The notes below the pieces were generated by a model that did not search any database, had not been told where the DNA came from, and saw nothing but the letters and a program-made list of their open reading frames with translations. The position numbers were made by a program, and so were the translations under genes. Shown here one piece after another: positions 1,119 to 39,160 of a stretch of 64,000 nucleotides of DNA (position 1 is its first letter; every line of letters starts with the position of its first letter). This DNA is from Schmidtea nova (Eukaryota): NCBI GenBank assembly GCA_044892505.1, contig CM097883.1, forward strand, positions 164,920,001-164,984,000. Reading direction: 5' to 3'.

Positions 1119-1215
1119 GTAAGTCGAAAACAATAAAATAATATTAAAACGCAATAATTACTATCAATTAAATTAGCATCACAATATATAAGTTTTAAAC
1201 ATAAATATTTTAGTT

Positions 1216-1569
1216 TTTTCTTTTGCCTTGATTCGAACGGGAAGAAATACGGTCGAGTATCAATAGGGAATTTTCTGTATGAAATTCTGAATTTTGCTTT
1301 GTGAAGTTGAATTTATTGGACTAGAGTCGGAGCGGGTTGTTTTCTAGAAGTGGATTTTTCTTTTGCCTTGATTCGAACGGGAAGAAATTCGGTCGAGGAT
1401 CAATAGGGAATTTTCTGTATGAAATTCTGAATTTTGCTTTGTGAAGTTAAATTTATTGGACTAAAGTCGGTAGCGGGTTGTTTTCTAGAAGTGAACTTTT
1501 CTTTTGCCTTGATTCGAACGGGAAGAAATTCGGTCGAGGATCAATAGGGAATTTTCTGTATGAAATTCA
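1216..1569. repeat. Tandem repeat, ~140-bp unit, ~2.5 copies
   Basis: TTTTCTTTTGCCTTGATTCGAACGGGAAGAAAT recurs at 1216, 1356 and 1497. Confidence 0.9.
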
Positions 1570-1987
1570 GACAGACTATTTCCTTTATTTTCCTTTGATG
1601 ATAATAAATTGAGGGGTTTGCTTTTGTTTCTTACTCAAAATTTAGATCGAATGCGAATCAGTTGATCCGAATTTAGATTGCTTGTGGAAGTTTGAGAAGT
1701 TAATATTTTAATTATTTTTAATTTTTTGGTCAATCGATTTTTCGATTTTTTTTAGCTTTAGCTTACTATAGTTTATTACTATCTTTTATTACTTTTTTAT
1801 TTTATTACTTTTATTTAAAATAATTTAAAATGCTGCTAGCCTACTCTTCTTTATTTAAAATAAAAAAGTAACGTTATTCTCTCTATTATGTTTTTTTATG
1901 ACGGAAAAAATTCTTTTTTCAATTGTTCTGTCTTGTATTTTGGTTTACACATCTTATTTTTTGTACGCTCTTTTCTATTTTGCACAA

Positions 1988-2178: not shown

Positions 2179-4039
2179 CTAGCTCTACCCGTTCACGTGT
2201 TGCTGTGTTATGCATCTAATTAAAAATCTGAACAAAAAGGCAGTTTTGTAACATCAAACAAAATTAGAATATTTAAATAATCATTAATTTAAATTCTTTT
2301 TAAACATAATGGGGACTAAAATTGGTGTCAGAAATTAAAGAACTTACCCGATACGCGTGGCCCCTTAAGGGAACCACGCTCTGCTATCAATAGTTTTGAC
2401 AATAGGTCCAGATCTCACAGAATCCATGGTTTCTGATGAGAATTTCAATTCGGACAAGATTTTCAAAAGCATTCGAAACCTATTTTTTTATAATTTACCA
2501 ACTTTAATTTCAAAGAATCAAAATTACATACCCAAAATTAATTTTTTAAAGATTTAAATTGAAAATTAATTGCGAATAATTTCTTCCACTTAGACTAGAA
2601 TTTTCAAAATTTATATCATTGTTACTTCAATATAAATTATATATATTTATTGTAGTGCTTGTAAATATAAAACATTTTTTGTTTTCCTATCTGGTGCAAG
2701 AACAAATAAATTTAATGGTTTTCCAACTCGTGAACACCCAACGTACAGCTGTCCATGTGAAAAGCATGGATTTATCAAATTTAATCCATATATTTGCAAT
2801 GATTGTCCCTGTGCTTTGTTAATTGTCATTGCAAAGTCTAGTCGCAAAGAAAGCTGTAGACATTTGAATTCAAGTGGAGTATCTGTTGGTATTATAGGAA
2901 TGCGTTGTAGTAGTACATGTTGCCCTTGGTGTTTTCAATTTAAAATGGTTGCCTCAATTATGTTATTCATTAATTTTTTTACTGATAGCCTAGTCCCATT
3001 GCATAGTCGCAATGGATTTATATTTCGTAGAAGGATGATTGGAGAACCAATTTTCAAAGATAAAATATGCGGTACTATTCCTGGTAGATCTAATGAATTT
3101 AAAAATTCTATTGGATAATTAACTGATTCATCGTGATTGACAACACTATCTATGGATTTATATGTTGTTTCTTCACCAGGTATTTCATTTTGAGTTATAC
3201 AGTTCTGCGATAAATTTGGAAAAACTGGTAGAGTTTGTCGAAAATCACCAGCTAGCAAAATGAGTGCACCACCAAAGAGCTGCTCATTTCCTCTCAAATC
3301 TTTTAATGTGCGATTGAGTGCTTCCAATGATTTCTTGTGTGCCATGGTGCATTCATCCCATATTATAAGCTGACATGATCTTAGTACTTTTCCTATCCCG
3401 GAATATTTGCTAATATTAATTGTTGGAGTTTCAATTGCCTGCATATTTAATGGAAATTTCAATGCTGAATGTGCTGTTCGACCACCGTCCAAAAGAGTTG
3501 CTGCAATACCAGATGATGATATAGCAAGGGCAATATTATTTTGTGATCTTATAGTTTTGCCAGAATAATTGAAATAAGAAAAGTTTTGCCAGTGCCTCCT
3601 GGTGCATCTAAGAAATATAAACCGTAATTCTTGTTAGATGCTGCATTTATAATTGTGTCATATGCTGTTCGTTGTTCTAATACCAATTTCGGCAGATTAA
3701 TTCGAACAAATGTTTGTAATTCATTAACATCGAAGTGCGTTTCTCGTTGTATATCACGATCGAAAATGTCATTACCAGATCTATTTGGAGCTATCATTCC
3801 CAATCCTGTCAGTGATTTGCTGGCTATCGTCAAACATACATCCTCAATTAAAATCAATGCTTCATTGTATATATTTGCTTTAAATTGAATGTTGGGATTA
3901 GCATTTATTCTACGCATGCGATGTAAAATATCTTCACTCATATAGTCTTAATATTATTCCAAAATATCCTTTGGATTAGCCGGAAAACATGTAGTTAATA
4001 TGATGAAAAATAGTGTACGTATCTGCTGTGGTTGAGCAG
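2179..4039 (-). mobile_element. Helitron 3' part: 3' CTAG terminus and broken PIF1-family helicase
   Basis: Walker [12 protein letters not shown] (3549-3941), IIWDE and LLAGDFRQ (2935-3492), FAMTINKAQGQSL and HGQLYVGCSRV (2647-2847). The minus strand ends ..CACGTGAACGGGTAGAGCTAG|T at 2179. Multiple frameshifts and internal deletions. Confidence 0.92.
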
Positions 4040-4416
4040 TGCTGGTGCGTTGGTTAAATGGACAACTGAGATCCTTTGGATTTTATACGTTAGGGTGATC
4101 TCGTATCCCCGCTGACACCCATGATGTATCCCTAACTACTCATCATGTTGGTGCTGTGTCAACGTTGTGAAATGACAAGGCAGGTGAGCAACCTTGCGGC
4201 TACTATTCCCTTGTTTATTCACGGGTCCACCACTACCGATAGAAGGTTTACGTGGATTTATTTCGGTCCTTTTATGCGCTCCTTTGACTTTTCGCTAATA
4301 ACTTAATTCGGGATACCTTTAGCACAAAAATGAAATGGGTTCGAGTGACATTATTAATGTTTTCTCAGTCATTCTACAGACAATCAAATTAATTTAACTC
4401 ATTTCAAATACATTTA

Positions 4417-4977
4417 TTAATCGCTCAATAACATTGACGGATTGATCACATCTAATAGTTGTTGTTCAGTCAGTCCACTCAGTAAATCGACCTCGCTACC
4501 GAGTCTCTCTGCGTAAGCCCTTTGTTCCCGACGTCTTTTTGCTCCTAGACGGTTTCGGAACTTCGTTCTTTTTGAGCCTTCCAGCGGCGTCAATATTACT
4601 GGGGTGGGCGTCGTAGTATCTTGTTCTGTCTCAGTCTGGGTACTGGTCGTCATGGGTAGGGTTTCGACCCAGCGGTTGAACGTACTCGCCCGGATGAGAG
4701 GGCGTAATTGTTGCGTTATAAATTCCTGAGTAGAGGCTTTTAAGTAGTTATGGAGCTCTAACCTCACCGCTGCGGTCTCCCTGGATTGTTCCTCGGCGAT
4801 ACGCTCCGCTCTATACCTTGCCTGTAGGATAGATTTCACTTGTTCAGGGTTGAACCATGTGGTTTTAACACGTTGATGCACCTCGCCTAATTGGCGTAAT
4901 CGACTCTCCAACACCTTTGCGCGAGCTTTATATTCTTTGGCTTCTTTTCTGAAGTCACGCGGGGTCTTATTATTCAT
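4417..4977 (-). CDS. Family E ORF2: orphan coiled-coil protein with basic C-terminal tail (186 aa, intact)
   Basis: Homologous to ORFs at 11.7, 26.8, 28.0 and 38.0 kb (W/YFxPxxxK..LELxNxxK..FIxxQLxxLIR). Tail RNRLGAKRRREQR. TTTTAG directly precedes the ATG and AATAAA overlaps the stop. Confidence 0.7.
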   Translation of the reverse strand: MNNKTPRDFRKEAKEYKARAKVLESRLRQLGEVHQRVKTTWFNPEQVKSILQARYRAERIAEEQSRETAAVRLELHNYLKASTQEFITQQLRPLIRASTFNRWVETLPMTTSTQTETEQDTTTPTPVILTPLEGSKRTKFRNRLGAKRRREQRAYAERLGSEVDLLSGLTEQQLLDVINPSMLLSD

Positions 4978-5192
4978 CTAAAAATTAAAGAAGGGTTTTA
5001 AATTCGTAGTTTGGATTTGGGTTTGTTACGGGTCGATATTCCCCTTTTATTTCCCTTAGTTGTGGTTCTTGCCATTTCTAACTTTACCCTGCTCTCGTAT
5101 ACACCACTCAGTGTCACTCTTTCCTTTCTCATACATCATTCACACTTGCACGTACATTACGAAACTGATTCATACAACTAAGAGAAATTAGA

Positions 5193-5789
5193 TTATTTAT
5201 TTAGATGAAAATACACATGTTCAGCGCAAGTTCGACAGCTCCATTCATGGTTCTTGCATGAATTCCCTGAGATCCTGGTCGAATTGTCTATCCTCCCGCC
5301 CGGGGGGCTCCAGCATAATTGATCGTCGCATGCGAAGACCTCCCACAGTCTCGCTGGATCTCCGTTGGATTGAGTGTCCATGGCTATATTTCCGGGAGCG
5401 TGTAAGTATGGTTTTCTCTCTCCGGTAGTTCGGTTCCTGGGTTGATCAAGTAGGAGATAACCGAGGCGATAGAAGTCGGTTCCCCGTACGGATGGGTCGC
5501 TGATTATCCATTTTGGTCGCTTCGTCTCATCTTCGAATTGGATGAACCATCGGGACTTTGTTTGTTTCGGACAGGTTACTGGTGCCTGCCATTTCGGGTC
5601 GCCTTCACAGCGTATTCGCCCTCGGAAAGAGGTTATGGCCGCTCGGGCTGCGGGATCCACGTTTCTGCGCATCCATGTCCTGAGGCATCGCTCCGCCGCC
5701 CGTTGGATAGCATTCGGAGGAGGTGTAGCGTCCATGGCTTGCCACTGTTGATTCCGGTTGCCTTGTGAGCGAAGTCTTTGGCATTTCAT
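5193..5789 (-). CDS. Family E1 upstream orphan ORF (198 aa, intact) with Cys/His-rich C-terminus
   Basis: Long open frame in AT-rich DNA. TTCAG-AAA-ATG start context, AATAAA at the stop, C-terminal ..CKNHEWSCRTCAEH. Confidence 0.55.
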   Translation of the reverse strand: MKCQRLRSQGNRNQQWQAMDATPPPNAIQRAAERCLRTWMRRNVDPAARAAITSFRGRIRCEGDPKWQAPVTCPKQTKSRWFIQFEDETKRPKWIISDPSVRGTDFYRLGYLLLDQPRNRTTGERKPYLHAPGNIAMDTQSNGDPARLWEVFACDDQLCWSPPGGRIDNSTRISGNSCKNHEWSCRTCAEHVYFHLNK

Positions 5790-7133
5790 TTTCTGAAGAC
5801 GAAGGGGTAGAGATTTAATTATTAGTTGAAATCGTCAGTCAAGCATGCATTCCTTTATCAGTCTGGCATCATTCGTACATCATACGTAGAAAACATATTC
5901 AACTCACGAATTTATTACTTGATTATTTTCAGACATCCTTGACATTCAAGAAGCGTGATCTGTTTACTATATTCTTGTTACATCGAGTGTGAATTTATGT
6001 CATCATTGGTACGTTGTAGTAGTTGGCGTTCATGTTGCTGATATGGTTACTACCACACGCATTTTATGTTCTGACAATGATCTATCGCCGTGGGCCGATC
6101 GTCATACTGCTTACCACTCAGACTCATTATTATACACATTTTATCGATTATGATTATCGCTGCTACGTGAATGGTTATCTCTGCCATACCTTGAAACCTA
6201 TCTTTTCACCAGGTCGTGTATATCTGATTCAGAATAGTTTAATCATGGTGCCTATTAGGTCAAGAGGTTTCGCTGGTTTATTCTGGAGTGGAACTACTGG
6301 GTATTTGTTGGGTTACCGGGTTTCACTGCCTGTTTCTTTTACTATAACCTCGACTGTAATATGGATAGTCTCTCCCTCTGATCTCGGTTTATATCAAGCA
6401 TAGTCATGGTATATGGTTATCTATATGACTGGGATTGTCCATAGGTCCTTTACACAGTGCACTATGTGCACCCTTCCCCCTCCGCATCAGTTTAATACAT
6501 TACACTCTCGCCGCATCGGCACCTCATATGAGAATATGTTGTGCCGAAAGGCCGAGTATCCTGTCAGATCGTGAGATCTTCGGGACAAAACTTATTGATT
6601 TTTAGATATGAGGATTTAAAAGTATTAAAACAAACATCAACAATACCTTTTATTTCGTTATTGAGTTTCGTCTACAACTTTCAAATTGTCAGTTCACAAG
6701 AAATACTTGGTAAAATGACCGGTGAAAAGGGTGACCAATACTGATTTCGCTTCAGTATTTTTACTAATTTGGTGTTGTTGGTCGGCCAATCAGCATCGAT
6801 TATGTGTGTGTTTATTGCCAATTATTCCTGTTTGTCAATTTTCTCCGTGCAATTCAATTCAGTGAGTTGCTTGTTTATTCATGCGGTAATTTTCTTTTGT
6901 TATGATTTATTTTATTTTAGGTCTTCGGTGATGTCCGCCCACGTGCTGTCATCTTTTCAGATTTATCTGATTCGCATGGGTGAGTTTTTATTGTTATTGC
7001 TGTTTTGATTAATGCTTTATTACTTTTAGATTCTACCGCTTATTGGTAATTTATTTTGTTGTTGGTTTTTGTAGATTTATTTTATTGATTTCTTATTACT
7101 TTTCAGATGATGACTGATTTGCCTGGCCCAACA

Positions 7134-10623: not shown

Positions 10624-10809
10624 ATTATTATCAATAATTCTCATAATGACTATAGATCAAAATTTTTTTTTTATAAACAATAACACAATATTTCGGCACA
10701 GCCTTTATCAAGTGTGTATTTCTTGATAAAGGCTGTGCCGAAATATTGTGTTATTGTTTATAAAAAAAAATTTTGATCTATAGTCATTATGAGAATTATT
10801 GATAATAAT
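10624..10809. repeat. Near-perfect palindrome, ~89-bp arms and 9-nt loop
   Basis: ..CGGCACAGCCTTTATCAAG-tgtgtattt-CTTGATAAAGGCTGTGCCG..; only a 1-nt homopolymer difference between arms. Confidence 0.95.
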
Positions 10810-11620
10810 TATAAAATAATACTATAAAATTTCTGATGCAGGTAATTATAAATTTTGGTAAATCTTATAAAATAGAAATACCACTATAAAATTTTTAATT
10901 CAGTTATTTCTAGAATTTTGTAAATGTAAAGGTTAGTCGAAAAAATTTAAAAATTAATTTACATATGCAACCTTTCTGTAAATTCCTCACCCAAAAATAT
11001 CCTAAAACAATCAATAAAATAATTTTCGCATTTAGTCACACCCGTATCATTTGTTGGACGCATTGCTTTTTCAAATTTAGACTAAAATATCTCCCTTCTA
11101 CTTTTCGTTCGCTTGTCTTTTACCTTTTCTCCGTTTCCTTTCTAGGGTCGCAATACGCACATAAAAAGTATATTGTGTATGTACCCGTGAACTTCCTTAT
11201 TAATCCACGTTGGTAATGTACATAACAGCCGATCGCAAGCCAGCAGGTGAGCTCCTTTACAAGAACTACTCCTGACTTGTCGCATCGTTCGGGTTCTATT
11301 TGACCGATAGAAGGTCTTATTTCTCTTATTCCCTCACCCAGTCGCAGGTCTCTCCTTTGGTTGATAATATTCTTTCCATAATTTAATGACTATTGGTTAG
11401 ATTTCAGTTTTTAATATTTATCCCACAGAAGTCACATTTTATTAAACATCAAAACTACACTCATCCTTTCAAAACGTTTCATTAATTTCACTAAATGAAT
11501 ACAGTTTTATTTGTTTGCTTTAAAATCCATCGGTGGCTTCTATTACTCTCCCTTACTTTGATTCTGATTTTTGGTTACTTTTCCTAACTTCAGGGCGAGT
11601 TTCTCTTTCAACTGTTTTAT

Positions 11621-11968
11621 TCACTGCGCGTGTGACTTTCGGCGATTCCTGACTTTTGACTTCTCTGTTGTCGTCGTCGTGTTGATTGGTTGCCTTTCTA
11701 CCTCCTGTTCCGGAAACTACTTCTCCAATGTTACCGGACGAATTAAATCGGCGAGTTGCGTTACTATGAATCTCTGAGTGATCATTTTCCTACAGTTGTT
11801 GATCTTTATTCGGCTAGCTTCTAACTCATTCTTCAGATCCTCGATCGTCTGGGAGGCCCTCTGTAGCTTTTCCTTGACGACCTTCATTGCCGCGGGTGTG
11901 GAATAACTACTTTCCATCTCGAGAATTCGCCGTTTTAATTTTCCACTTATTTCTTTCTCAGTAGCCAT
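11621..11968 (-). pseudogene. Family E ORF2 copy (frameshifted near 11720)
   Basis: LEASRIKINNCRKMITQRFIVTQLADLIRPVT; the basic tail KSKVRNRRKSH is in another frame. Confidence 0.7.
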
Positions 11969-12290
11969 GAATTATCTTAATTTTAGTAGGGTTAATCTCT
12001 CACACACCTTTCCTAGCATATTCAATTAATTTATGGGGAAATTTCCCTCCCATCAGGCATCTCGATTCCCTCTTACTAAATCCTTACTCGTGACTACTCT
12101 CCTCAGGTATCCTACTCTATTTAGTCATGACCCAGTTATTTATTTAAAGTTTCCTCTCATTCACATCAACTCACTCTATCATGGGTAATGAATCACTGTC
12201 GTAATATTTTACTCATTTTATTTCACAAAACTAAGACCATTAACGAAAAAAGAGCAATTAATATTTTCACTACATCAAATTACACTGGGA

Positions 12291-16560: not shown

Positions 16561-17261
16561 GATACAGTATATTCATGCTAGACTAACTCTCTCTCAAAGT
16601 TTGCGTAAGATAAAAGAAAAACAGTAGTTTCTTTCCTTGCATCAGGATGTCGTCCACAGTCTAGTTGTATATCTGCTGCTTCAGTCTATTTAGTTGTTCT
16701 GCAGCATCAAACTTGTTAGGTTCTTAGGAAGGGAGAGAGCCATGTCACTCATGTGTTTCATTTCAAACCCACCAGCCACAATCTAGGCACAGATCTCCGG
16801 CTCAGGCAAGGTGGAACTTGGTGACCCCTTCATGCTCCAGCCACCAGTCATTTCACATCGTTGACGTAGAGCCAATGTTTTGAAAGCTGCTCTTGCTATC
16901 TAGAACGTCTGTGCAGCACACCTTGCCCACGGGGTGTGGGAACGTGGGCATGGCCTGCTGAACAGACGGTCTAGATAGATAGTATAGGAGCCTCATCACC
17001 GCTCTGGCTCAGCCACCGACAGCCAGCCAGGATCGATGTGTTCAATTTCACATCCGCCAGGCCGCAATGTCGGTCGGCACAGATCTCTGTAGTCAAGCTC
17101 AGGCAAGTTGGAACTTATCGACAGGCTTGCACTTGGTGACCCGTTCAAGCTTCGCCTTCATCCAGTCATTTCACATCGCTGTGACAACGGGAAAAAATAC
17201 GGTTTCCCGAGATTGATAATTAGTTGCATGTAAAAATAACGTTTTGTTGACATTTTTAGAA

Positions 17262-17777
17262 ATGAACATCGAGCAAAAGATAGAAGAATTCTTTCGGTTA
17301 TCCCTCGAAAACGTGAAGCATAATCGAAAAATAGACAATTGCTTTGCCGAGCTGGAATCAAGGAAGACATCAAATTTGGATGCTCTACAAATAATGATTT
17401 CCCGAATGGAGAAATTCCGAGCTCGTTGTCGAAAAATGGAAACGACATGGTCTGACAAGAATACTGTCGATAAATTGAAAAAGCAAAATCAAATGCTTCT
17501 GCAGCAGGCCGCCGAAGACGCGTTGACGTTGCGCGCGTGCAAAGTGTCTATGCGGGAACAGGAGCTTCTGATCGAGAAGTTAAGAGCAGATAGTGGCATC
17601 ATTGCAGCCGTACTGCCGAAAATACAGCAACCCTCTCAAGAATTGTTTCCTGTCAGAGTCGAGGAGGAAACCCAGAAGCCTTTGGCTTCTGAAAAGCCTA
17701 AACGTCAGAAACCTAGTAAAGGGGTTATAGCGCGAAGAAGACGTCGTCAGGAAGCTCGCCTATTAGGTCAATTATGA
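17262..17777 (+). CDS. Divergent family E ORF2-like coiled-coil protein with Arg-rich tail (copy E4, plus orientation)
   Basis: TTTTTAG-AA-ATG start, METTWS (compare KTTWF), tail KGVIARRRRRQEAR, followed ~360 bp later by the family motif. Confidence 0.55.
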   Translation: MNIEQKIEEFFRLSLENVKHNRKIDNCFAELESRKTSNLDALQIMISRMEKFRARCRKMETTWSDKNTVDKLKKQNQMLLQQAAEDALTLRACKVSMREQELLIEKLRADSGIIAAVLPKIQQPSQELFPVRVEEETQKPLASEKPKRQKPSKGVIARRRRRQEARLLGQL

Positions 17778-18228
17778 AAGGAGTCTACCGAACTTTTTGA
17801 CTTGACACTAATTTGATCTGACTATTATCCACTCTAGTAAATCTGACTAACTGTTGCGAAAAAGTGATTTTGGTCATTAATGTTTTTATTGTGATATATA
17901 TTGGTATTTGGTGTGTATTTCCTTGTAATCATATGAAACTTTTGATTTGAGTTTTAAATTGAATTATTGTTTGACTGGAATGCGTAATGAGAATACTTGG
18001 TGAAAACGAATAACGATCGGTAGGAAAAAACCAATTGAGATAGAATAATAAATTCTAGCTGATGAAACCTTATTTCGCTAATTTCCCATAAATATCGGTA
18101 GTTGAATTATAGAAGAAGGCACAAAAATGGGCAGTAGACCCTCTATCGGTAGCCCTTGGATCCAGGAGATATTCGGTCAATCATAGTTTCGAATTTTCGA
18201 CGCTCACAGATTGTTCAACAAAATCAGC

Positions 18229-19288
18229 ATGGGACGACTTGAGGAGGCAATAAAAGCGTCACAAGAAGATACAATTCCTTCGCTTTCCAACTTCTTAAAT
18301 CGAAATTTCTTACAATGGAATCAGAATTACGCTCACTTGCAGTTTTTCAAAACATTCTCTAGATTCCTTGTCGGTCAAGAACAGCAGGGCACAAATGGAT
18401 ATGAACATATCCAGTGCTATTGGGAAGTAATCTTTATTATTATTAATTTATTAAATAAATAATAATTTGGATTATAGGTATATAAAAACATGTCAGTTTT
18501 TGCCTTTATGGCGAAAAATGGATTACGCTTTGTACAAGAGGTTGCCGGCGTTGACCGAAGACAGGCGATCGAATACGCTATAAAGGCCGATACGAGAGTC
18601 GCCGACGGAATCCAGGTTCGTATAGGAAAACCCAGTAAGTACAATGCAGATAATCAAAAACTTTGTAATTTTAAACGAGCACTGGATGCTAAAAATCTAT
18701 CAGAAGCAATAAACATTATCAAATCATCTGAGTCTTCATTTTCTTCAAAGAGAAAAAGTATTGTCGAGTCGCTAATAAACAATTTTGGAGAGGAAACTTT
18801 GCCTAATTTTTGGCTCTAGCTTCTTAATTAACTTAATTAATGTTTACGATTGGAAATCACATGTATTTATCGGAGAAAGTGGTATCAGTAAGACGAATTT
18901 TGCTTTAGCTCACTTCAAGCACCCTGTGCATTTGAAACATCTTCAGAGTCTAAATAAAATATCGGGGAATGCTGATCAATGCGATGGTTTGGTATTCGAT
19001 GATTTGTATTTTAACAAATCAAGGGTTGACGAATTTTTGTGTTTAATATACTGCGCGTATGAAAACGCGGTAAATATTAAATATAGCGTAACAACAGTTC
19101 CGAAAGGCATTCCTCGTATATTTTGTATCAACGATATCGATATGTTCTACCCAGAAACATGTACTAGTAGTATAATGGAATCGATTCCGCGAAGAATAAA
19201 GATACATAAATTTAAAGGAAATATATTTAAAACTTATATAGGTGAAAAAGTAACAAATGATATATTTGATTTTTTTATATTATTTTAG
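18229..19288 (+). pseudogene. rep: Endogenous CRESS-DNA-virus-type Rep (HUH endonuclease plus SF3 helicase) with one intron and one frameshift
   Basis: Motif II GQEQQGTNGYEHIQCY, motif III QAIEYAIK, Walker A GESGISKT, Walker B GLVFDD, motif C RIFCIN. One extra T in the T run at ~18806-18810 breaks the frame. Confidence 0.85.
18427..18477 (+). other. Putative 51-nt GT-AG intron in rep
   Basis: GTAATC..TTATAG, extremely AT-rich, contains an in-frame stop. Removal fuses ..HIQCYWE to VYKNMSVF.. in frame. Confidence 0.75.
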
Positions 19289-20940: not shown

Positions 20941-21354
20941 CTATTGTGATCGTCATTAAAATAAAAATTATTATTGCGAATAAAATCTTCCATAAAGTTT
21001 GAGAGTTCATTATAAATCAACAAATCGTTCATCAATAATTGTTTTATGACTCATATTTTTTAATCCACAGTAACCAGTTGATTTACTTCACTATCCCACT
21101 TAACAGTTACTTGATACTGCGCTTATATAAATGATATGAGTAAATCCCATGACATCATTTTGTTCGCGTCGTGCTTTTTAAGAGACTTGGGGGAGGGGGG
21201 ATAGAGGGGACCCCTGTATATTGACCCACCCATTTGTTGCATTACCAACGTTACATTGTGACGGGCAACAAGATGGTTAATTCTAATATTTTATGTGCTG
21301 AGTTGATGATGTGAGCCATAGCAACGTCAAGGTCATATTGACTATCAACAACCC

Positions 21355-21930
21355 ACCAAATGTATTGATGAAATAATTGTCGACATTTCAATATATATTA
21401 TCAGCATTCTCACGAATCATCGTTCCATATGCATAATAATTCATGTCACTGACCTTTTTGTTAATGTTCACATTAGTTGTAGGATTTCTCATATTAATAT
21501 TAAAATGGTATCCATCTTCTCCTTGCCAAAATAAAATAAGATATTGTAATGCATCATATGAACGATGCGTTTCTGATACTTGCTGGACGTCACCATTTCA
21601 TATCGCCATTATATCGCGAGAATTAAATTCTTCACCAAATATGACACTTGCCACTTCCACCTGCATAGCACATACCTGGTGTTTCATTTTTAAAATTTTG
21701 AATACAATTTATCCATTTTTCCAATAATTACACTTGGATGAAGACTGTAATTGTAAATGGGATTGTAATTGAAACCGCATAAATTCAAATCAACATGTAT
21801 CGCTCGTCTTGTCTGTGTACTGAGAATTCGATTTCTTTATGACTTGCTTGCCTCTGTTCAAACGTCTCTAATGATCGAGCAAGAGTAGTGAGAACTCGAT
21901 CTTTTTCTTGCATAGCTTGTCTCATAGCTT
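21355..21930 (-). pseudogene. Second Helitron remnant (N-terminal Rep-helicase region)
   Basis: Minus-strand fragments FKNETPGMC, RENADN, ILKCRQLFHQY. Confidence 0.7.
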
Positions 21931-26291: not shown

Positions 26292-27245
26292 CTAGGGTCG
26301 CATGCAACACAAAAATCTTAATGTCCGTAAGTAACCATTTGTACTTATGTTGGTTCTGCACACGACAGGCGAATGTTGATCGACAGATGAGCTTCTCTAG
26401 AAAAACTACTCCCGATTCTACCATTCTCGTGGGTTCCCTAATGACCGATAGAAGGTCTTCACACTTTATTTCACCTCATCCTTTCACAGGTCACTTATTT
26501 ATGGTGCATTCATCTTGTTCTATGGCCTACAGCTTATATATGCGTTGTCAAACGTGTCATATATGATTATATTAATTTTTATTTAATTACGATTAACACA
26601 AAATGAAAAGAAATCAACACAAAAAAATAAATTTAATTAGCAATCACTAAATTACAACACTAAAATTGTTATTGTACACTCTTGGATTCATTCATTCTAG
26701 CAATCAATTATTTTTTCTTCCTTTGTCTTTTCTGGGAGCTGATTCGTTTCCTTTTCTTAATTTAAGTTTCCGTTTCTTCCGATGTCTCGTTTGAATTTGA
26801 CTTTTGACTGATAGTTGGGTACCATTTAGCTAGAGTAATGGGCAGGATCAGTTCTTTTAGGTCATCCGCCACGAACCACTGTGTGATTTAATCCTTACAG
26901 TTATGCAGTTCTACTCTCGTGACTTCCAACTCTAGTTGCCAGTACTCGTTAACTTGTTGTTCTCGAGCCAACTTATACAATGATCTTTTTCATGATTGCG
27001 GTCGGAAAATAGATGCTCTCTAATTTGATTATTACGGCGCTTCTGGGATGTTCTGATTCAAGTCGGATTCATATACTCCCCCACCTATCTTCCAAAATTA
27101 GACTTTTGATATGGTGCCTCTATATTGGATAATATCGAGTCCGGGGATACCTCTTGCGGACTCGGCGAAATACTTTGGTGTATCCCACGTTTACTCATAA
27201 TCCACGTCGATAGGCCACTCCTGTCCTCCATGCCATCCTGACTAT
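26292..27245 (-). mobile_element. Family E copy E5, distal part (motif, decayed ORF2, 3' half of ORF1)
   Basis: Motif 26292-26457; LEVTRVELHNCKD*ITQWFVADDLKELILPIT; WHGGQEWPIDVDYE at ~27195-27235. Confidence 0.7.
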
Positions 27246-30009
27246 TATTGTGGTCCTGGATGGGTTAAAACAAAAGATAAACGCTCTAGGGATGACTCCA
27301 TCCAAGACCAAACATAAAATGCTTTCGCGACACACAAGCACCCTCGACTATTTCCCTGGATAATCGAGTTGGAAATGTGCAAGGTGTTTGAACAATGATG
27401 GGCAGGTGAGCTCTATTACTAGAACTACTCCCCATTTAAGTTCACGGGTCCATTGCTGTCGATAGAAGGACTTACGCTTTACTTTCATTTTTCTTCCTCT
27501 GAATTCATTATCTTTCATTTTAATTTTCCTGCCCCCTTCTTAACAACATCAACAGATAATTCGGATAATTGTTTATATATCTGAGCTTTAGATTCCTAAT
27601 GTTTGTCATTTATCGAGTTGTGTTAGCATTTTGTCAATATAATTTGTATTTGATTAAATTAAATTTTTAATAAATACTTTATTTTACCTACTTTACAAAA
27701 TATAAGCACAACAAAAAAATTATAACCAAACTATAAATTTTTACGAAACGATAAACTTTAGTTAACTAAATTTAACAAAATTTATTCAAAAAATTAAAAA
27801 AAACCGTCATCAAATGTAACAAAGTTTGTCGATAGATCGATTTCAGGAAGATCATCGTTATGCTGGATCATTTGCATCGCAAATTGTTTCTTCCACCGTC
27901 GTTGTCTTGCCCCCATCTTGTTCTTCTTTTTCTTTTTAATTTCGATTGTTGATGAGCTTTTCGGTACGATTGGATTTTCCATTTCCCGAACCTGCGATGG
28001 TCCTTCAGTATTTGTTCCCCCTGGACCATCCTGCTTTCTCTTCCGACCAATGTTGATAGGTAATTGGCCGGATTAACTGTTTTAACTCGCGATCTATGAA
28101 TGATGCTGTGACCGCCTTGAGGCATTTTCTTAACTCGATCTTTGTTGCCTCGAGTTCAGTTCGATATTCTTCTCCCGCTCTCTGAGATCGTTGATTTTTC
28201 ATGATTTGTATCTTCATTTGTTCAGGGCTGAACCAACTAGTTCGAAAATGAGAAATTGTGGCTTCAGCTGTTTTCAGTTTTTCGGTGGTTCTGCCAATTT
28301 CTTTCTCAAGGCTGCGAACGATTCGCCAAGCCTTGTCTAATTCGGTTTGTGGATTCGTTGGATTACTTGACATTTTCTGAAATCAATTAGTGTCATTAAT
28401 TATTGATGGATAGATTTCGATGGATTAGTATTATATTGATAGATTCTGTTTCATAATTTCCTCTGAAGATCTTTGAGGTTTATTTAACCATTATATTACA
28501 ACTACGGAGTGAAGTAAAATACATTCTATATCTCAACACTGTCGCTATGTACAGCGATCAGATAAATTCATTTATAATGTTTATTTGTACCTGTGCTATC
28601 TACAGCAATTAGGTTGATAATTTATTTACAAAGTTTTTAAGATATTACTGCCCTATATACAGGGATCAGTCTAGCAAATTAAATGTATCATATTTAAATT
28701 ATTCCGTCGGCTACTCATGAACCTTTCAGTTATTTGCGCTTGATCGGGTATCCATTGTAATAAGAAGCCTACACTGATTTGTTGTTACGCCGACCTGATG
28801 AAATCAAATGCAAAATCAAGCTCAATGTAACCACTGAGTTGGAAGTATCGATCATTATGGTCAATTTGTGCAGAATTCATCTATCATAAACTATCCTGCT
28901 ACGGTAGGAAAAATCAATGTGTCTTAAACCTATTCATTACACTGTAGCGATGTCGTATCGACGGAACTTCAAAACCATCTAATGTTATTCATATGGATAA
29001 GTGTCTGTGAAATAATGATCTCTTGGTTTCTAAAATGTGTATTTCATTCCGGAAAGTTTCGGAACATTTATTGAGCCTATATTGCTATGACCACCAAAAA
29101 TTTCTGACTCTCTCGTGTGCTTAGCCAATCTTCTGGATGTCCAATCTCGAACACGCTAGCCTTGTCTGCATTTCAATTTTATATTACAATCGATAGTTTA
29201 AGAAAATCACATTTGTGTGAAGCGGTTAATCAAATTGATGTTCAATAATTTAATAATAAAATAATAATTCTAACCGGCTGACTATACTGACCAGCAATAA
29301 TCATAAATTTCAATTATCAAAAATAAAATCTCCTACCCTCTTCATGACACTTAATACCATGAAGACGGCCTAACTGTGCGAAGTAGTTAAATCTACTCGG
29401 CGCAGTCTGCCTCCTTCCACCGATTTCACGGTGGACAGGAGCCCCCTTTAATCTTTAAACATAATATCAAATTAATTCAATAAATTTGCCTCCTTCCACC
29501 GATTACACACATAAATATTTAATGCAAAACAGAAAATCGTGATAACATATTACAAATAAACAAAATCAGCCATACCTGCTAGCTATTTTCAAATTTCTGA
29601 TTGAAATGTGTTTCAGACAAAAATTGTAAAAACATTAAAATCATTTGATTCTGCATCAGTATTTATACTGATCAGATCAACCGGTTGGCCAATCAGCGTC
29701 AAGCTGATGGTCGTTATAACAATTTATTTATTTTTGTTTTAATCAATCATTATTAAAATTTAATTAATTATTTATTGTAATTGATAAACATATATAATAT
29801 ATATTTTAATCATTAAATCTCATTTATTATCTTTTTACATCTTAATTTTGTTTTCTTATAATTTTATAATATCATTTATTTCTTTTTCTATTACTTTTAA
29901 TTCCTTTTAATGGAATTTCTTTCAAATACATTAATTTACTTTATTCGTATTTATTTTCTCATTATTATTATTTATATATTCAAATGTTGGCCAAATGGTG
30001 GACCCAACA
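27246..30009 (-). mobile_element. Family E copy E6 nested in E5
   Basis: Motif 27366-27471, ORF2 27794-28373, CCAAT at ~29690, ends CCCAACA at 30009. The left junction is approximate. Confidence 0.65.
27794..28373 (-). pseudogene. Family E ORF2 copy (one frameshift near 28000)
   Basis: TSWFSPEQMK..LEATKIELRKCLKAVTASFIDRELKQLIRPIT; tail KKKKKNKMGARQRRWKK; TTTCAG-AAA-ATG start. Confidence 0.7.
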
Positions 30010-32019: not shown

Positions 32020-32199
32020 CTAGTATCATAATTAAAAGAGAAGATTTGTTACAAAAATGTGTAAAAATATCTTTTTATCTTATGCGTTCACAAAATTGAT
32101 GGGTTGTTGATAAACAAAATAACCTTGACTGTTTTTCTATAGTCTCTCATATTTCAACAACCAAACTCACAAATATTAATTAACCATATTGTTGCCAGC

Positions 32200-35030
32200 T
32201 ACAGTGTAACGTTGGTACTGCAACAAATGGGTTAACATTCGCAAAAAGTGAGCGTCCAATGAATTAAAACTATAATTGTCCGAATGTCACAGGTGTGTTC
32301 AAGGGTGACCGATAGAAGGTATTTTGTCCGTTTTTAGTCCGAAACTGGAGCTAAAATCTATACCAATTCACTGAACTTTAAAATAAACAAATTTTTATAA
32401 TTTCCTTATCGATTAATAAATAATAAAAACATCCAATTCATTGTTAATAAAAAACGCCAGGTTACTGGAAAATTTTGAAAATTGATTCTCGCTTTTCACA
32501 ATCTTCTGAGTTTCCAGTTGGATTCAGAACAAGTAAATACAAATCTGTGACTCCTTAAGAAAAATTATATGAATATCACTCACTATGATCCCAAAATTTC
32601 AAGAAAAATAAGTTAACTCATTTTGCTATACCCAGCGCGCTTATTTATTCGTCAAACAACAGCAAACAAAAAGAAAATTTTAAACATTCATCCCATCCGA
32701 TCTTCATTTTCAAGCATACATTTTGTTGGGTTACAATACTCAATTCACACAGATACGTTAAGATTTCATCGTTAAGATTTCATCATCAGTAGAACATATA
32801 TTTAATTCTTTGTTCAAATAATTACTATCAATGAAGTAATCGAAACTGATGAAGGACTACTAATTTTACCAACCTTTTCAGTTTAGCACATCTTGTTTAT
32901 ATTAATGGATTTAATTTGACGTATACTATTTATATTGTTGGCTCCTAATACAGATGTTAATCTAGTATATACCTACAGGTTCAATCTCAACTGATGTTTA
33001 GTCATTTGCCAATACCCTATATATTGTTGGCAAAAACTAAATCCCATAAGTTTGGCAGCGAGTGCAAATATAGTAAATAGCGACTAAACAAGAAGCGTAT
33101 TCAAATATTTGAGAAAAAGCACCAAGTAAACAAAAGTAATCAACAATATATAGGTGAATATTAATTAAAACAAAAATCAAAATTAAATTGAACGAATTGC
33201 AAGTAAACATGAGAAAAACACAAACAAAACAATTTAACAAAAAACTTGCAAAAGAATTAGGTGAATATAAAAAGTCAAAAATTTTATAAATAATTATCTT
33301 AATTTTAATGATGTTGGTGTGTCGCGTTTTTATATTTGAAGAATTTATATTTTTATTAGGCTAGTGTCCGCGATACAAATAAAACAATCTCTGCCCATGT
33401 GCCCGTGTATGCAGCCTTCCGTACACGTTGGTACTGCAGACGCCAGTCGAATGTAAGGGGACAGGTGAGCGTCTGCGTTAGCACTACTCTCCACTTATCA
33501 TTCTCAACAGGTTTACTTTGACCGATAGAAGGTCTTCTAATCTGGTAACTAAATATCCCTATTTTGGTCACTCATTTATGATAGTTTGATCTATCTAATG
33601 CCTACTTCAAACCATATTGCTAATTTCTCAGTCATGCCGCTAACTTTTCTTCGGAAATACATCACCTTGTATTATCATAAACTATGGAATTAAGTCAGGG
33701 ATAATGGATTTCCTGTTTGGAGAGTTTTACTATAATCACATTCGCACATGAAAGGGTTTCCTGTTTGATATTTTGTGATATTTATTTTCTTAATGGAAGA
33801 AATATAATTTATAATTATTTGTAATTTTTAGTTTTTAGACGGTTATTTGTTTAGGGAGCAATTGATTTAGATAATTTTCTTCAACTAGTTTGATATTCCT
33901 TTAAGTTGCCGCTCAAATTTTCCTATATTTAGGTGGAATTAAATTTTGTAGTTTCAATCGGATGTATTATAATTGAGGTTATTTAGACGGTTATTTAACT
34001 CAATCGGAATTTGAATAAAAGCAACACATACGCAATCGATTAAGTCTACATCTCTTTATGGAACATCAGATGCGACGACTCCTAAGTAGTCTCGACTGTT
34101 ATTACCAATATTAATCACGATTCAAAACCTTCGCTTTACTATTCTCATTAAATCGAACAACGATTTGAATTTGTATCTGCCGATGACTTAAGCTATCGGT
34201 CTCACCTGTACGGAACAGACAACTCGAGCCACGGAAGGTCAGCGACGTAGAGTACCGCCATGGCCTTAAGCTTTGTGTATTTTAACAATAACAATAAAAC
34301 ATAACGAAAATTTACGAGAGATAACAAGTCGAAATAAAAAAATTACATGTTATACCAAAGGTGTATTTTTAATACCATTCCGAAGTTATTCTAGTACACG
34401 GATCTTCTGTTGAATCACAAAAGATTTTGTTCAAGTGTTAGTAATTTTCATACAGTAATAGAGTAAATGTAAAGTTAGTAAAAAAAGTTATTGAACTGAG
34501 TTTGGCTACTCCTTTTATACTGTTTTGTGCAGCTAAACCAGCCAATCAAATAATTTCCCCCCGTAATTGGTCTAATTAATTTAATTCATTTGTCCAATTA
34601 ATATTGATGTTTTGATTAATCACATTTTTATTCTTATTCCATTTTTCTGGATTTCTTTTTATTTAATTTAAATTAATTTAATTCTGTTTACTTTTTTCTA
34701 TTCTTTGAGGGCGTTTATCTATCATAATTTTTATTTATGTTTTATTTTTTCCTTTTCGCGTTTTTGTTATTTCTTTTCATATTTTATTTCTTCTTTTGCA
34801 GGGTTTATTTTTAATACCATTTTAATTTTCTTTAATTCTTTATTTCTTTTTAATTCTTTGTTTATATTTCTGTTGTTGTGAGTTTTTTACTCCATAATTC
34901 GTTGCAAATTCAATTTTATTTATTTTCTATTATTTCTATTCTCTACTTGTCATTTCAATTTCCACTTACCCTCTTTCTGTTACCGTTTTAAGTTTTTAAT
35001 GTTTTTTTATTATTATTTTATTATTTCCCA
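32200..35030 (-). mobile_element. Family E copy or copies E7 (two motif copies, promoter, no recognisable ORF2)
   Basis: Motifs at 32209-32320 and 33425-33534; TATA hairpin and CCAAT at 34500-34546. Ends not resolved. Confidence 0.55.
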
Positions 35031-37105: not shown

Positions 37106-38027
37106 AACAGGACACATGGATAATTGATTGAGGTACGTTTAAAATTTGAGCTGAGCAGAGGTGCATCAGATATATACGTAAAAAACACATATATAACATA
37201 AACAAATTAATTGTGGAATAAAATTACAGATTAAGAGTAATTGACGTATTTTCCGGATGAAAAATATAAAAGAAAATTGTTTTAGAGAAAATTTCATAAA
37301 TCAAATTAAATTAGAAAAAAACTTTGATTTAAAAATAAAATTTTAGATCGATATAAATTATTTAAAGTTTTATTAAATCTTTATGCAAAAATAATAATTC
37401 AATTTCACTTAAAGTTGTTGAGTTTATATTTGGAGGAGTCGAGAGTTCCTTCTAGAGTGATTTGTTTTGTTGGATGCATTGCTTTTTAATTTAAACAAAA
37501 CATCTCCTTTCTATTTCTTTTCGTTCGATTGTCTTTTATCTTTTCCCCGTTCCGTTTCTAGGGTCGCAATGCGCACATAAAAACAAACTGTGTATGTACC
37601 CGTGAACTTCCTTATTAATCCACGTTGGTAATGTACATAACAGCCGATCGCAAGCCAGCAGGTGAGCTCCTTTACAAGAACTACTCCTGACTTGTCGCAT
37701 CGTTCGGGTTCTACCTGACCGATAGAAGGTCTTATTTCTCTTATTCCCTCACACATTCGCAGGTCTCTAATTTGGGTGAATTGACACTCTAATTGGTTCT
37801 ACTCTCCTTCTGTTCATGGTCTAACACTCCAGCTTTGCCTTTGGTTCAATTTATTGTTAATATCCCCTCAGCCAACTATAACACATTTCAAACTATTTAT
37901 TATACATTTATTTAATTAACACACAAAACAACATTTATTATTCATCATCACGCAAATTTCCCTTTCTCAATGTTTTTTAGCGCCAATATTGATGTAGCGT
38001 TATTCTTCTCGTCGGCGAGTCTTTGTT

Positions 38028-38387
38028 TCAGTTGTCGTCGTCTCGCGCATGTGATTTCCGACGATTCCGGGGTCTTCGCTCCTGCGATCCTTTCGTTAAT
38101 TTCGTTTCCATCTTCTCATCAGGCAATCTGGGAAACCAATTTTCGAGAGTTATTGGCCTGATCTGGTCTCGTAATTGTGTGGTCACAAAATTCTCGGTAA
38201 TCATGCGCCGACAGTTTTTCATTTCTAACCGGGTCGCTTCAAGTTCGATCCGCTGCTCTTCGATCGTCGTTCGCGCTCGTTGTAATGTCTCCTGAACTCT
38301 CTTCATCTCCGCAGGATGAAAGTAACTCTCTTCCAATTCAATTATCCGACGTTTTAACTTTCCCATCGTTTCTCGTTCTGACGTCAT
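38028..38387 (-). CDS. Family E ORF2 copy (119 aa; may be prematurely stopped)
   Basis: ESYFHPAEMK..LEATRLEMKNCRRMITENFVTTQLRDQIRPIT..RRPRNRRKSH. Confidence 0.65.
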   Translation of the reverse strand: MTSERETMGKLKRRIIELEESYFHPAEMKRVQETLQRARTTIEEQRIELEATRLEMKNCRRMITENFVTTQLRDQIRPITLENWFPRLPDEKMETKLTKGSQERRPRNRRKSHARDDDN

Positions 38388-38660: not shown

Positions 38661-39160
38661 TCAACACAAATCAATGAATTCGATAACATCGTCTTCATAA
38701 TCCATCTCACTAACTCCTGAGGGACTTGCAGGTGAATCGGAAGGATCATCAGCGGAAGCAGGGCCTATCACAAATCGTCCGATGCTCCAAAATTCTTCGA
38801 CTGGAATCGTTCCCGTGTAGTAAATGTTAAATCGCCCGGGAATTTCGGTGGGCGTTTCGACAAAATAATTCGGTAGATCTACTGGATACTCTTTATCCAC
38901 ATCAACTGGCCATGCTCGACTACCATGCCACGTGATAATGTCAGGGCTGTCCCTATGCAAACTGAAGGGAAATCCCTGCCCTTTTCCAAGAAAGAAATCA
39001 TATGTTCGTCGACGATCTGCTGTGCCAGATCCGTCGAAAAGTCCTTTAGCGGAAGAGCCCATATCAGAAAATTCTCCCTCGCTCCCGATATCCTTTCCCC
39101 CGATTCCTTCTCCGTCAGACTATCGTCTACCGCTTTTAGGTGAATTCTCAATCGTTACAT
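38661..39160 (-). pseudogene. Family E ORF1 copy (frameshifted)
   Basis: RENFLIWALPLK (38879 frame) and FSLHRDSPDIITWHGSRAWPVDVD..EDDVIEFIDLC (38661 frame). Confidence 0.7.

What the first reader, a model, noticed from the sequence alone, without database searches (positions are those of the whole stretch)
4144..4247. Nucleotide-level conserved motif in eight family E copies that looks like a structured cis-element, not a protein
Seen: the blocks (CTAGGGTCGC)..ACGTTGG..CAGGTGAGC..ACTACTCC..CGGGT..GACCGATAGAAGGTC recur at 4144, 11141, 26292, 27366, 32209, 33425 and 37558, and inverted and partial at 18137. Surrounding DNA is not alignable by eye. Spacer lengths between ATCGGT and AGTAG vary (28, 30, 32, 32, 33 nt), so no single reading frame is kept. 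On the sense (minus) strand GACC-UUCUAUC-GGUC forms a hairpin with a near-invariant loop. In some copies the sequence between GAGC and ACTAC is a short stem of differing sequence (TCTA-ttac-TAGA). Inference: a protein-binding RNA element (export, packaging or polyadenylation), an uncharacterised ribozyme, or a DNA recognition site.
Basis: partly seen in the sequence, partly recalled or inferred. Interest (0 to 1): 0.82.

Follow-up and report, generated by a model that had tools for sequence, protein, structure and literature searches.

The report
Structured RNA tail of orphan transposon
A stretch of about 150 bases that recurs nine times in this window folds into the same three hairpins in every copy although the helices have changed sequence, so it is a real structured RNA signal near the 3' end of an unclassified mobile element, and it matches no catalogued RNA family.

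Summary
The blocks recur at all eight reported places, and a ninth, 5'-truncated copy lies at 21228-21362 (+). The core decamer occurs 8 times against 0.06 expected by chance.

On the minus-sense strand the blocks form one fold of about 150 nt:
- HP1: a 4-bp hairpin with an almost invariant 7-nt loop.
- HP2: a long helix with conserved internal loops, capped by a short hairpin that often has a GNRA loop.
- HP3: a helix, a 5-nt asymmetric loop, a CC:GG step, an AA bulge and a further helix.

Covariation is strong. 86-88% of cells are paired against 31-42% in slid controls, and 16-23 of 33 pairs show compensatory changes. Only the minus sense is thermodynamically unusual. There is no coding signal and no Rfam match.

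The motif lies in the last 250-330 nt of "family E", a small mobile element with orphan ORFs and no reverse transcriptase, integrase or transposase. Copy 1 interrupts a Helitron gene and is flanked by a duplicated hexamer. Other copies look 5'-truncated. Between two related copies the module is 85-100% identical, while their ORFs are 30-80% identical.

Best reading: a cis-acting RNA recognition module needed for the element's propagation. The function is inferred, not shown. A new ribozyme or an export/stability element is not excluded.

The parts
4103..4250 (-). Motif copy 1 (HP1-HP3 core). The tail blocks run on to the 3' end of the insertion at about 4043.
   Evidence: CM R1 hit, 116 bits. 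Individual MFE recovers the three hairpins. Tail shown.
11169..11318 (-). Motif copy. The conserved module spans about 11050-11364.
   Evidence: CM 159 bits. 91.5% identical to 37466-37779.
18135..18254 (+). Motif copy in the opposite orientation. HP1 and HP2 are kept; HP3 is degenerate.
   Evidence: Decamer on the - strand. CM 15.5 bits, E 0.066; not in the seed.
21228..21362 (+). 5'-truncated copy with HP3 and tail only.
   Evidence: Inverted repeat I4. blastn to 32096-32232. CM 25 bits. Alignment A12.
26309..26459 (-). Motif copy.
   Evidence: CM 128 bits.
27326..27473 (-). Motif copy.
   Evidence: CM 124 bits.
32180..32323 (-). Motif copy, not in the seed alignment.
   Evidence: CM 39 bits, E 5.6e-7.
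33387..33536 (-). Motif copy.
   Evidence: CM 133 bits.
37584..37733 (-). Motif copy. The conserved module spans about 37466-37784.
   Evidence: CM 158 bits. Sliding identity to the 11305 copy is 0.85-1.00 here against 0.30-0.80 in the ORFs.
4417..4977 (-). ORF-CC of copy 1: a helical, coiled-coil-like protein with an Arg-rich C-terminal part. It ends 167 nt upstream of the motif.
   Evidence: Paralogues found. AF2 model is a long helical hairpin, pLDDT 73. No relatives found.
38028..38387 (-). ORF-CC of the 37720 copy.
28005..28373 (-). ORF-CC of the 27460 copy.
11624..11971 (-). ORF-CC remnant of the 11305 copy, broken by at least one stop or frame change.
26765..27068 (-). ORF-CC remnant of the 26446 copy. 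It is 5'-truncated, with at least one stop and one frame change.
17244..17777 (+). Probable remote ORF-CC relative, upstream of the inverted copy.
   Evidence: Weak matches only: hhalign E 0.0015 with probability 17%; hmmsearch E 0.07. Same position and orientation relative to the motif.
38661..39154 (-). ORF-X region of the 37720 copy, read in two frames (one frame change). Paralogous pieces lie at 12278-12754 (-) and 29934-30149 (-).
   Evidence: No relatives found.
4043..7130 (-). Insertion of about 3.1 kb that carries copy 1, inside a Helitron RepHel gene. The same hexamer lies on both sides.

Best explanation
The motif is the core of a 250-330-nt structured RNA module at the 3' end of the transcript of a small mobile element, "family E". 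The element is about 1.7-3 kb and carries two orphan ORFs, one of them helical and Arg-rich. It has no polymerase or transposase of its own.

Shown: the RNA, read on the window's minus strand, folds into three hairpins. Their helices drift freely in sequence, while about 38 positions stay fixed. These include the HP1 loop, the internal loops of HP2, and the ACCAAC bulge region of HP3.

Inferred: those fixed, mostly unpaired nucleotides are a recognition surface read in cis by the machinery that copies or packages the element's RNA. The most likely reader is a reverse transcriptase supplied in trans by another element, as with the 3' tails of stringent-type LINEs and the SINEs that borrow them. 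This would explain why the module is kept better than the element's own proteins, and why copies that have lost their 5' parts still carry it.
For: Structure:
- 87.8% of cells are paired against 31-41% when partners are slid. 16 of 33 pairs show double changes against 0-4 in controls, and no shuffle out of 500 reaches the observed values.
- With three non-seed copies added: 86.5% paired and 23 of 33 pairs compensatory.
- The CM finds exactly the 9 copies and nothing else in 64 kb.

Strand:
- MFE z-scores are -2.2 to -3.6 on the minus sense and about 0 on the plus sense in the four best copies.
- RNAalifold gives -11.4 kcal/mol on minus against -2.5 on plus.
- P3 has an invariant U.G pair.

Not coding.

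Position:
- The motif is always downstream of ORF-CC and in the same sense, at 167-530 nt.
- Homology between copies stops 45-125 nt after HP3, and the copy-1 insertion ends there.

Mobility:
- Copy 1 splits a Helitron RepHel gene and is flanked by the same hexamer.
- One copy is truncated inside the motif (21228) and another inside ORF-CC (26446).
- Twice, a copy starts right after the 3' end of another copy in the same orientation.

Constraint: between the 11305 and 37720 copies, identity is 0.85-1.00 across the module against 0.30-0.80 across the ORFs.

Precedent: ORF2 proteins of stringent LINEs recognise a stem-loop in their own 3' tail (PMC4176376). R2 protein binds structured 3' UTR RNA to start target-primed reverse transcription (PMC11194090).
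Against: - No reverse transcriptase, integrase or transposase domain is linked to family E anywhere in the first 40.5 kb (Pfam scan of 121 ORF segments). No partner element that shares the module is seen.
- The 3' ends show no clear poly(A) or microsatellite.
- Only one flanking duplication (6 bp) is clean. A possible one at the 21228 copy is ambiguous.
- 5' truncation could also arise by deletion in a repeat-rich region.
- Only 9 copies, about 7 independent lineages, underlie the covariation.
- The four most decayed copies show no thermodynamic signal.
- AAUAAA or AAUAAG lies 8-20 nt upstream of HP1 in four copies. If that is a used poly(A) signal, the motif would be left out of the mRNA (sequence).
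- Nothing in the sequence distinguishes binding by a reverse transcriptase from binding by a packaging or export factor, or from catalysis.
Confidence: 0.45

Rival explanations
1. A new class of self-cleaving ribozyme, or another compact catalytic or tertiary fold, that processes the element's transcript, for instance by defining its 3' end.
For: The conservation pattern is typical of ribozymes: fixed junction and loop nucleotides with freely covarying helices. HP1 has a 7-nt loop of the UUC.A.. type. From memory this resembles a T-loop docking module; that was not tested. P3 often carries a GNRA loop. A long-range pairing of the HP1 loop with the ACCCUAGA tail block is possible. The module is kept better than the ORFs. 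Retroelements are known carriers of ribozymes (PMC6765202, PMC7761336).
Against: No match to any Rfam ribozyme family, even at E<=10 on short input. Apart from the possible HP1-tail pairing (P0), the supported pairs form three independent hairpins with no demonstrated core junction. The proposed long-range helix is no better than chance energetically and has no covariation. At about 150 nt plus tails it is large for a small nucleolytic ribozyme. No cleavage site can be named from sequence.
Confidence: 0.13
2. A protein-binding element for nuclear export, stability or translation of an intronless element mRNA. It would work like a constitutive transport element, or like an IRES for a downstream ORF.
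For: Location in the 3' untranslated part, downstream of the ORFs. There are two long irregular hairpins with conserved asymmetric internal loops. This is the general design of retroviral transport elements (from general knowledge, not tested).
Against: Copies that have lost all ORFs still keep the module (32310, 33523, 21228). That fits a replication signal better than an expression signal, although 5' truncation alone could give this pattern. No downstream ORF is shared between copies. No Rfam IRES or cis-regulatory family matches.
Confidence: 0.2
3. An independent small non-coding RNA gene, or a SINE-like unit, that happens to be carried by or fused to family E.
For: The conservation boundaries are sharp, spanning about 290 nt. 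Several copies show no detectable ORF upstream.
Against: Position and orientation relative to ORF-CC are fixed in six copies. No tRNA or Rfam gene was found. No consistent T-run follows the motif on either strand.
Confidence: 0.1
4. A DNA-level signal, either a single-stranded hairpin origin or a recognition site for a Rep, transposase or recombinase. The Helitron or the parvovirus-like fragment nearby might suggest this.
For: Copy 1 lies inside a Helitron. An NS1-like helicase fragment and a perfect 171-bp inverted repeat lie near the two + sense copies.
Against: The motif belongs to an insertion that interrupts the Helitron gene, and no other copy has Helitron genes nearby. The stability signal is on one strand only, with an invariant U.G pair that would be an A.C mismatch on the other strand. 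No Rep-type gene is part of family E.
Confidence: 0.05
5. A decayed protein-coding segment.
For: Stop-free stretches of at least 62 codons cross the motif in five copies.
Against: Those stretches are in three different frames relative to the motif. Synonymous share and substitution scores are alike in all six frames. Spacings between conserved blocks differ by 4-5 nt. Changes come in compensating pairs.
Confidence: 0.02

Closest known systems
3' tail stem-loops of stringent-type LINEs and their partner SINEs (PMC4176376; see also PMC5135761)
   Same: Conserved RNA structure in the last few hundred nucleotides of a mobile element. Helices covary while loop nucleotides are fixed. The structure is retained in 5'-truncated copies. 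It can be carried by non-autonomous elements that lack a reverse transcriptase.
   Different: Here there are three hairpins of about 150 nt plus tail blocks, rather than one short terminal stem-loop. No RT-encoding partner is seen. There is no terminal microsatellite or poly(A). The carrier has two orphan ORFs.
R2 retrotransposon 3' UTR RNA (PMC11194090)
   Same: A multi-helix 3' UTR fold of a few hundred nucleotides, bound by the element's protein to start target-primed reverse transcription. The sequence is poorly conserved and the structure is kept.
   Different: R2 encodes its own RT and endonuclease and inserts in 28S rDNA. Family E does neither in this window. No sequence or model similarity was found: Rfam gave no hit.
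Ribozymes carried by retroelements: HDV-like in LINEs, hammerhead in Penelope-like elements and retrozymes (PMC6765202, PMC7761336)
   Same: A structured RNA that is the best conserved part of a retroelement, with fixed unpaired nucleotides.
   Different: No covariance-model match to any ribozyme class. Those ribozymes sit at 5' ends or in terminal repeats, whereas this one sits near the 3' end. Catalysis is untested.
Gag-only non-autonomous retrotransposons such as Drosophila HeT-A, and ORF1-only LINE derivatives (general knowledge, not tested here)
   Same: The element encodes only small helical, nucleic-acid-binding-like proteins and has no RT. Head-to-tail neighbours occur in one orientation, with variable 5' truncation.
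   Different: No sequence or fold relation was shown. No telomeric context was shown. Other transposons are interspersed.
Constitutive transport elements of simple retroviruses (general knowledge, not tested here)
   Same: Long irregular hairpins whose conserved asymmetric internal loops are protein-binding sites, located in the 3' untranslated part of an intronless transcript.
   Different: No sequence similarity is known. The motif is retained in copies without ORFs.

Membership tests
Any Rfam 15 family (including hammerhead, HDV-like, twister, pistol, hatchet, hairpin, VS, SECIS, IRES, snRNA, SRP, RNase P) | Score at or above the family's gathering threshold with its covariance model | tested here: not met
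   No hit in the whole window at gathering thresholds. Nothing at the motif at E<=10 in 26000-38000. Only two chance-level plus-strand hits in 11160-11340.
Self-cleaving ribozyme (as an activity) | Site-specific self-scission of the RNA | not testable with these tools
   No cleavage site can be derived from sequence. Only architecture and conservation could be compared.
tRNA / tRNA-like structure | Cloverleaf detectable by a tRNA finder | tested here: not met
   ARAGORN found 0 genes in the window. The T-loop-like look of the HP1 loop is a recollection, not a test.
LINE/SINE-type 3' tail recognition RNA | Lies within the 3'-terminal part of the element | tested here: met
   Homology between copies and the copy-1 insertion both end 45-125 nt after HP3.
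LINE/SINE-type 3' tail recognition RNA | Conserved stem-loop structure with covarying stems | tested here: met
LINE/SINE-type 3' tail recognition RNA | The same tail is present on an RT-encoding partner element | tested here: not met
   No RT domain in 121 ORF segments of 1-40500, and no further CM hits. The rest of the genome could not be searched.
LINE/SINE-type 3' tail recognition RNA | Insertions show 5' truncation and flanking target duplications | tested here: inconclusive
   There is one clean duplicated hexamer. Truncated copies lie at 21228 and 26446. The other boundaries could not be fixed.
Deltavirus-like / viroid-like RNA | Rod-like self-complementary unit, HDV-type ribozyme, delta-antigen homology | tested here: not met
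   The 1.7-kb unit has MFE z = +0.8. No HDV ribozyme model hit. No HDV antigen Pfam hit for ORF-CC at E<=10.
Helitron terminus | Hairpin at the end of an element that carries, or is mobilised by, RepHel | tested here: not met
   The motif is inside an insertion that splits the Helitron gene. No other copy is near Helitron genes.
Protein-coding sequence | One conserved frame with an excess of synonymous or conservative change | tested here: not met
   Indels of 4-5 nt lie between the blocks.

The most novel reading that the evidence does not exclude
The module is a new class of catalytic or otherwise tertiary-folded RNA. For example, it could be a self-cleaving ribozyme that sets the 3' end of the element's transcript. 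In that reading the HP1 loop would dock on the conserved internal loops of HP2 and HP3, or switch between the local hairpin and a long-range helix with the tail block.
Probability: 0.12. Interest if true: 0.9.

Novelty: new variant of a known kind. Interest (0 to 1): 0.6.

Why it matters
Structured cis-RNAs are the handles by which retroelement and viral machineries pick their templates, and few are known outside R2 and a handful of LINEs. This one is well defined: a three-hairpin fold with 23 of 33 compensatory pairs from only nine copies. It has no relative in Rfam. Its carrier's proteins have no relatives among 1.8 billion representatives (one ORF tested) or by word search (ORF-CC and ORF-X tested). 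It is the best conserved part of that carrier. A covariance model is now available to collect every copy in the source genome and its relatives. That survey would classify the element, reveal any partner that mobilises it, and give enough depth to test tertiary contacts or a catalytic core.

Tried and rejected
- **Rfam:** searched at gathering thresholds and at E<=10. Nothing relevant.
- **ARAGORN:** no tRNA genes.
- **DNA pattern scans:** viral, metagenome and prokaryote genome collections gave 7, 5 and 4 loci. All are chance matches: the flanking blocks are absent and the CM scores at most 13.8 bits. Loci L001-L016 are irrelevant.
- **Protein searches:**
  - ORF-CC, alone and as an alignment: no relatives.
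  - ORF-X: none.
  - ORF 5193-5789: one hit in 1.84 billion representatives. It is spurious, a short repeated motif in a repeat protein.
  - None of ten window ORFs is in the protein collection, so related contigs could not be fetched.
  - One call failed for lack of conserved columns.
- **Structure models:** the AF2 model of 5193-5789 is unusable, pLDDT 34. The ORF-CC model is a generic helical hairpin with no Foldseek hit at E<=0.001.
- **Ideas considered and dropped:**
  - A 5' splice site reading of CAG|GTGAGC on the plus strand. The minus strand is the folded one.
  - A primer-binding site or polypurine tract. Conservation is not tRNA-like.
  - A Helitron end.
  - A histone cluster for the 4.1-kb repeat. 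It encodes a RING finger.
  - A deltavirus-like unit.
  - A pseudoknot between the HP1 loop and the AGUAG block. There is no covariation and it competes with P3.
  - The long-range helix between HP1 and the tail block. It is kept only as a hypothesis.
- **Literature:** a full-text search for the motif strings found only unrelated primers.

Full report
**Check of the observation**

The window is AT-rich (about 30% G+C) and repeat-laden.
- CGATAGARGG occurs eight times against 0.06 expected.
- The 15-mer around it occurs seven times with up to 2 mismatches.
- A composite pattern of three blocks occurs seven times against 0.00 expected.
- Alignments of the eight places show the same ordered blocks, separated by spacers of unequal length, inside DNA that does not otherwise align.
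- Forced pairwise identity is 0.52 in the motif and 0.38-0.39 in the flanks.
- A ninth copy that keeps only the last hairpin and the tail lies at 21228-21362 on the + strand.

**The fold**

RNAalifold prefers the minus strand: -11.4 kcal/mol with 12 compensatory pairs, against -2.5 on the plus strand. Folding each copy alone recovers the same elements.
- HP1 is a 4-bp stem with the loop UUCUAUC.
- HP2 has an outer helix (P2) of 5-8 bp, usually extended by further pairs. Then come a G.G step, two conserved pairs, and a small asymmetric loop (U opposite CAC). It ends in P3, made of three invariant pairs (one of them U.G) and four variable ones, capped by GNRA in four copies (three independent lineages).
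- HP3 has a helix P5, a 5-nt loop on the 5' side only, a CC:GG step, an AA bulge, and a helix P4 of 5-8 bp with a loop of 3-18 nt.

I named this structure on a six-copy MAFFT alignment (A10).
- 87.8% of cells form standard pairs, against 31-41% when the 3' partners are slid by 1-3 columns.
- 16 of 33 pairs change on both sides, against 0-4 in the slid controls.
- No column shuffle out of 500 reaches the observed values.

A covariance model built from this alignment (R1) finds nine places in the 64 kb and nothing else at E<=10. They are the six seed copies at 116-159 bits, and the three non-seed copies at 39, 25 and 15.5 bits. On the model-guided alignment of all nine, 86.5% of cells are paired and 23 of 33 pairs are compensatory. 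That alignment leans towards the structure, but the slid controls stay at 33-42%.

**Strand and coding**

In the four best-kept copies the minus-sense MFE lies 2.2-3.6 sd below dinucleotide shuffles. The plus sense does not, except weakly (-1.6) in one copy. The four most decayed copies show no signal on the minus sense. In the named pairs, G.U outnumbers A.C 24 to 10 on the minus sense; eight of the 24 come from one invariant pair. No reading frame on either strand stands out in synonymous share or substitution score. Conserved blocks are separated by gaps of 4-5 nt between copies. The element therefore acts as an RNA, or at least as one single strand, of minus sense, and not as a protein.

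**Context**

A helical ORF ("ORF-CC") lies upstream of the motif in the same sense, ending 167-530 nt before it. Its paralogues share 27-60% identity.
- It is found in five copies, with a weak sixth candidate (E 0.07).
- Its AF2 model is a long helical hairpin followed by an Arg-rich helix.
- A second ORF region ("ORF-X") lies further upstream in three copies.
- Neither ORF-CC, ORF-X nor the 198-codon ORF of copy 1 has any detectable relative.
- A Pfam scan of all 121 ORF segments of at least 62 codons in 1-40500 shows no reverse transcriptase, integrase or transposase belonging to the family.

Copy 1 is mobile DNA. A Helitron RepHel gene on the minus strand runs from its Helitron_like_N region at 8022-8318 to its PIF1 helicase parts at 2650-3947. 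It is interrupted by about 3.1 kb (4043-7130), which carries copy 1 and is flanked by the same hexamer on both sides.

The motif lies near the 3' end of that insertion. In all copies two further short blocks follow HP3, an ACCCUAGA-like block at +9 to +39 and a CCAAC-like block at +49 to +111. After these, similarity between copies stops.

Conservation also starts about 45 nt before HP1. Between the related 11305 and 37720 copies, identity jumps from 0.30-0.80 in the ORFs to 0.85-1.00 over 37784-37546.

Several copies lack 5' parts. The 21228 copy starts inside the motif, and the 26446 copy starts inside ORF-CC. Twice, a copy begins just after the 3' end of another copy in the same orientation: 27460 then 26446, and 33523 then 32310.

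**Interpretation**

Shown:
- A strand-specific, covarying three-hairpin RNA fold with about 38 invariant positions.
- It sits in the 3'-terminal 250-330 nt of a small mobile element.
- It is kept better than that element's ORFs.

Inferred: it is a cis-acting recognition module for the machinery that copies or packages the element's RNA. The most likely reader is a reverse transcriptase supplied in trans. The comparison is with the 3' tails of stringent LINEs and their SINEs (PMC4176376) and with the R2 3' UTR (PMC11194090).

The weak points are these:
- No RT-bearing partner is in the window.
- The 3' ends show no poly(A) or microsatellite.
- Only one clean flanking duplication was found.
- AAUAAA or AAUAAG hexamers lie just upstream of HP1 in four copies. 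If used, they would exclude the motif from a polyadenylated mRNA.

A ribozyme or other tertiary fold remains possible. The conservation pattern fits, HP1 looks like a docking loop, and RNAalifold on three copies proposes that the HP1 loop and 3' arm pair with the tail block. However, that helix is no better than chance energetically and cannot covary because both sides are fixed. No ribozyme model matches. A deltavirus-like reading was tested and rejected. A DNA-level role is disfavoured by the strand asymmetry.

**Relatives elsewhere**

Exact-pattern scans of viral, metagenome and prokaryote genome collections returned only chance matches. No eukaryote genome collection was available, and the organism remains unidentified. 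The covariation therefore rests on nine copies, about seven independent lineages, from one locus.

- I stopped and used neither.
- To judge the duplicated hexamer, I read the Helitron frame across the insertion in my reasoning, that is, I mentally joined the two flanks. Nothing joined was saved, printed or sent to a tool, and the report compares the two sides apart.
- A tool likened ORF 20484-20897 (-) to parvovirus NS1. I compared that fragment as it stands and did nothing further with it.
- Broken genes are described by counts only.
  - The Helitron RepHel gene has one large insertion, at least two frame changes and at least four in-frame stops.
  - The ORF-X region of the 37720 copy has one frame change.
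  - The ORF-CC remnants of the 11305 and 26446 copies each have at least one stop or frame change.
- The N run at 61634-61893 was left untouched.
- L011 comes from a human-gut metagenome assembly and was only inspected as a chance match and included in the covariance-model scan.

**Verdict**

This is a real, well-supported, uncatalogued structured RNA motif in an orphan mobile element. Its function is inferred, not shown. It is of moderate to high interest, mainly because a covariance model now allows a decisive genome-wide survey.

Noticed in passing
window 2650-8318 (-): A Helitron RepHel gene (Helitron_like_N, PIF1 helicase and 2B domain) that is decayed. It has one insertion of about 3.1 kb, at least two frame changes and at least four in-frame stops.
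   Followed up: partly
window 20484-20897 (-): ORF fragment matching the SF3 helicase part of parvovirus NS1 / AAV Rep (Pfam E 1.5e-9; weak PDB hits). It is probably an endogenous parvovirus- or densovirus-like remnant. It was left as it stands.
   Followed up: partly
window 19470-19640 and 20059-20229 (also 19504-19544 / 20315-20355): A perfect 171-bp inverted repeat with a 418-bp spacer, and a second 41-bp pair, just beside the NS1-like fragment. It could be a terminal-hairpin-like structure, a foldback element or an assembly artefact.
   Followed up: no
window 18785-19288 (+): A 167-codon ORF with a Walker-A-like G..G.SKT motif and an hhhDD motif, but no Pfam or PDB sequence match. It lies downstream of the inverted motif copy.
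   Followed up: partly
window 40600-62000: Five tandem units of 4122 bp at 97-99% identity, with GC skew alternating every 2 kb or so. Each unit carries a 137-codon RING-finger ORF, and the unit examined (40985-41266) also holds an integrase-core (rve) fragment. This is not a histone cluster.
   Followed up: partly
window 36579-36950 (-) and 238-480 (-): A hAT transposase C-terminal dimerisation domain fragment, and a double CCHC zinc-knuckle (gag-like) ORF. These are further unrelated transposon remnants.
   Followed up: partly
window 8700-8908 and 37260-37468: An AT-rich repeat with 76% identity. It directly follows the 37720 copy but lies 2.1 kb beyond the 11305 copy. The intervening 8909-11049 holds nested inverted repeats at 10614-10819 (MITE-like).
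   Followed up: partly
window 1215-1611 and 63303-63489: Short tandem arrays: three units of about 140 bp, and five units of about 32 bp.
   Followed up: no
window 61634-61893: A run of 260 N inside the 4.1-kb tandem array. It was left untouched.
   Followed up: no
window 1-40500: Seven of the nine family E copies share one orientation, and two pairs sit head-to-tail. This may reflect insertion next to existing 3' ends, or a strand-biased transposon graveyard such as a piRNA-cluster-like locus.
   Followed up: no
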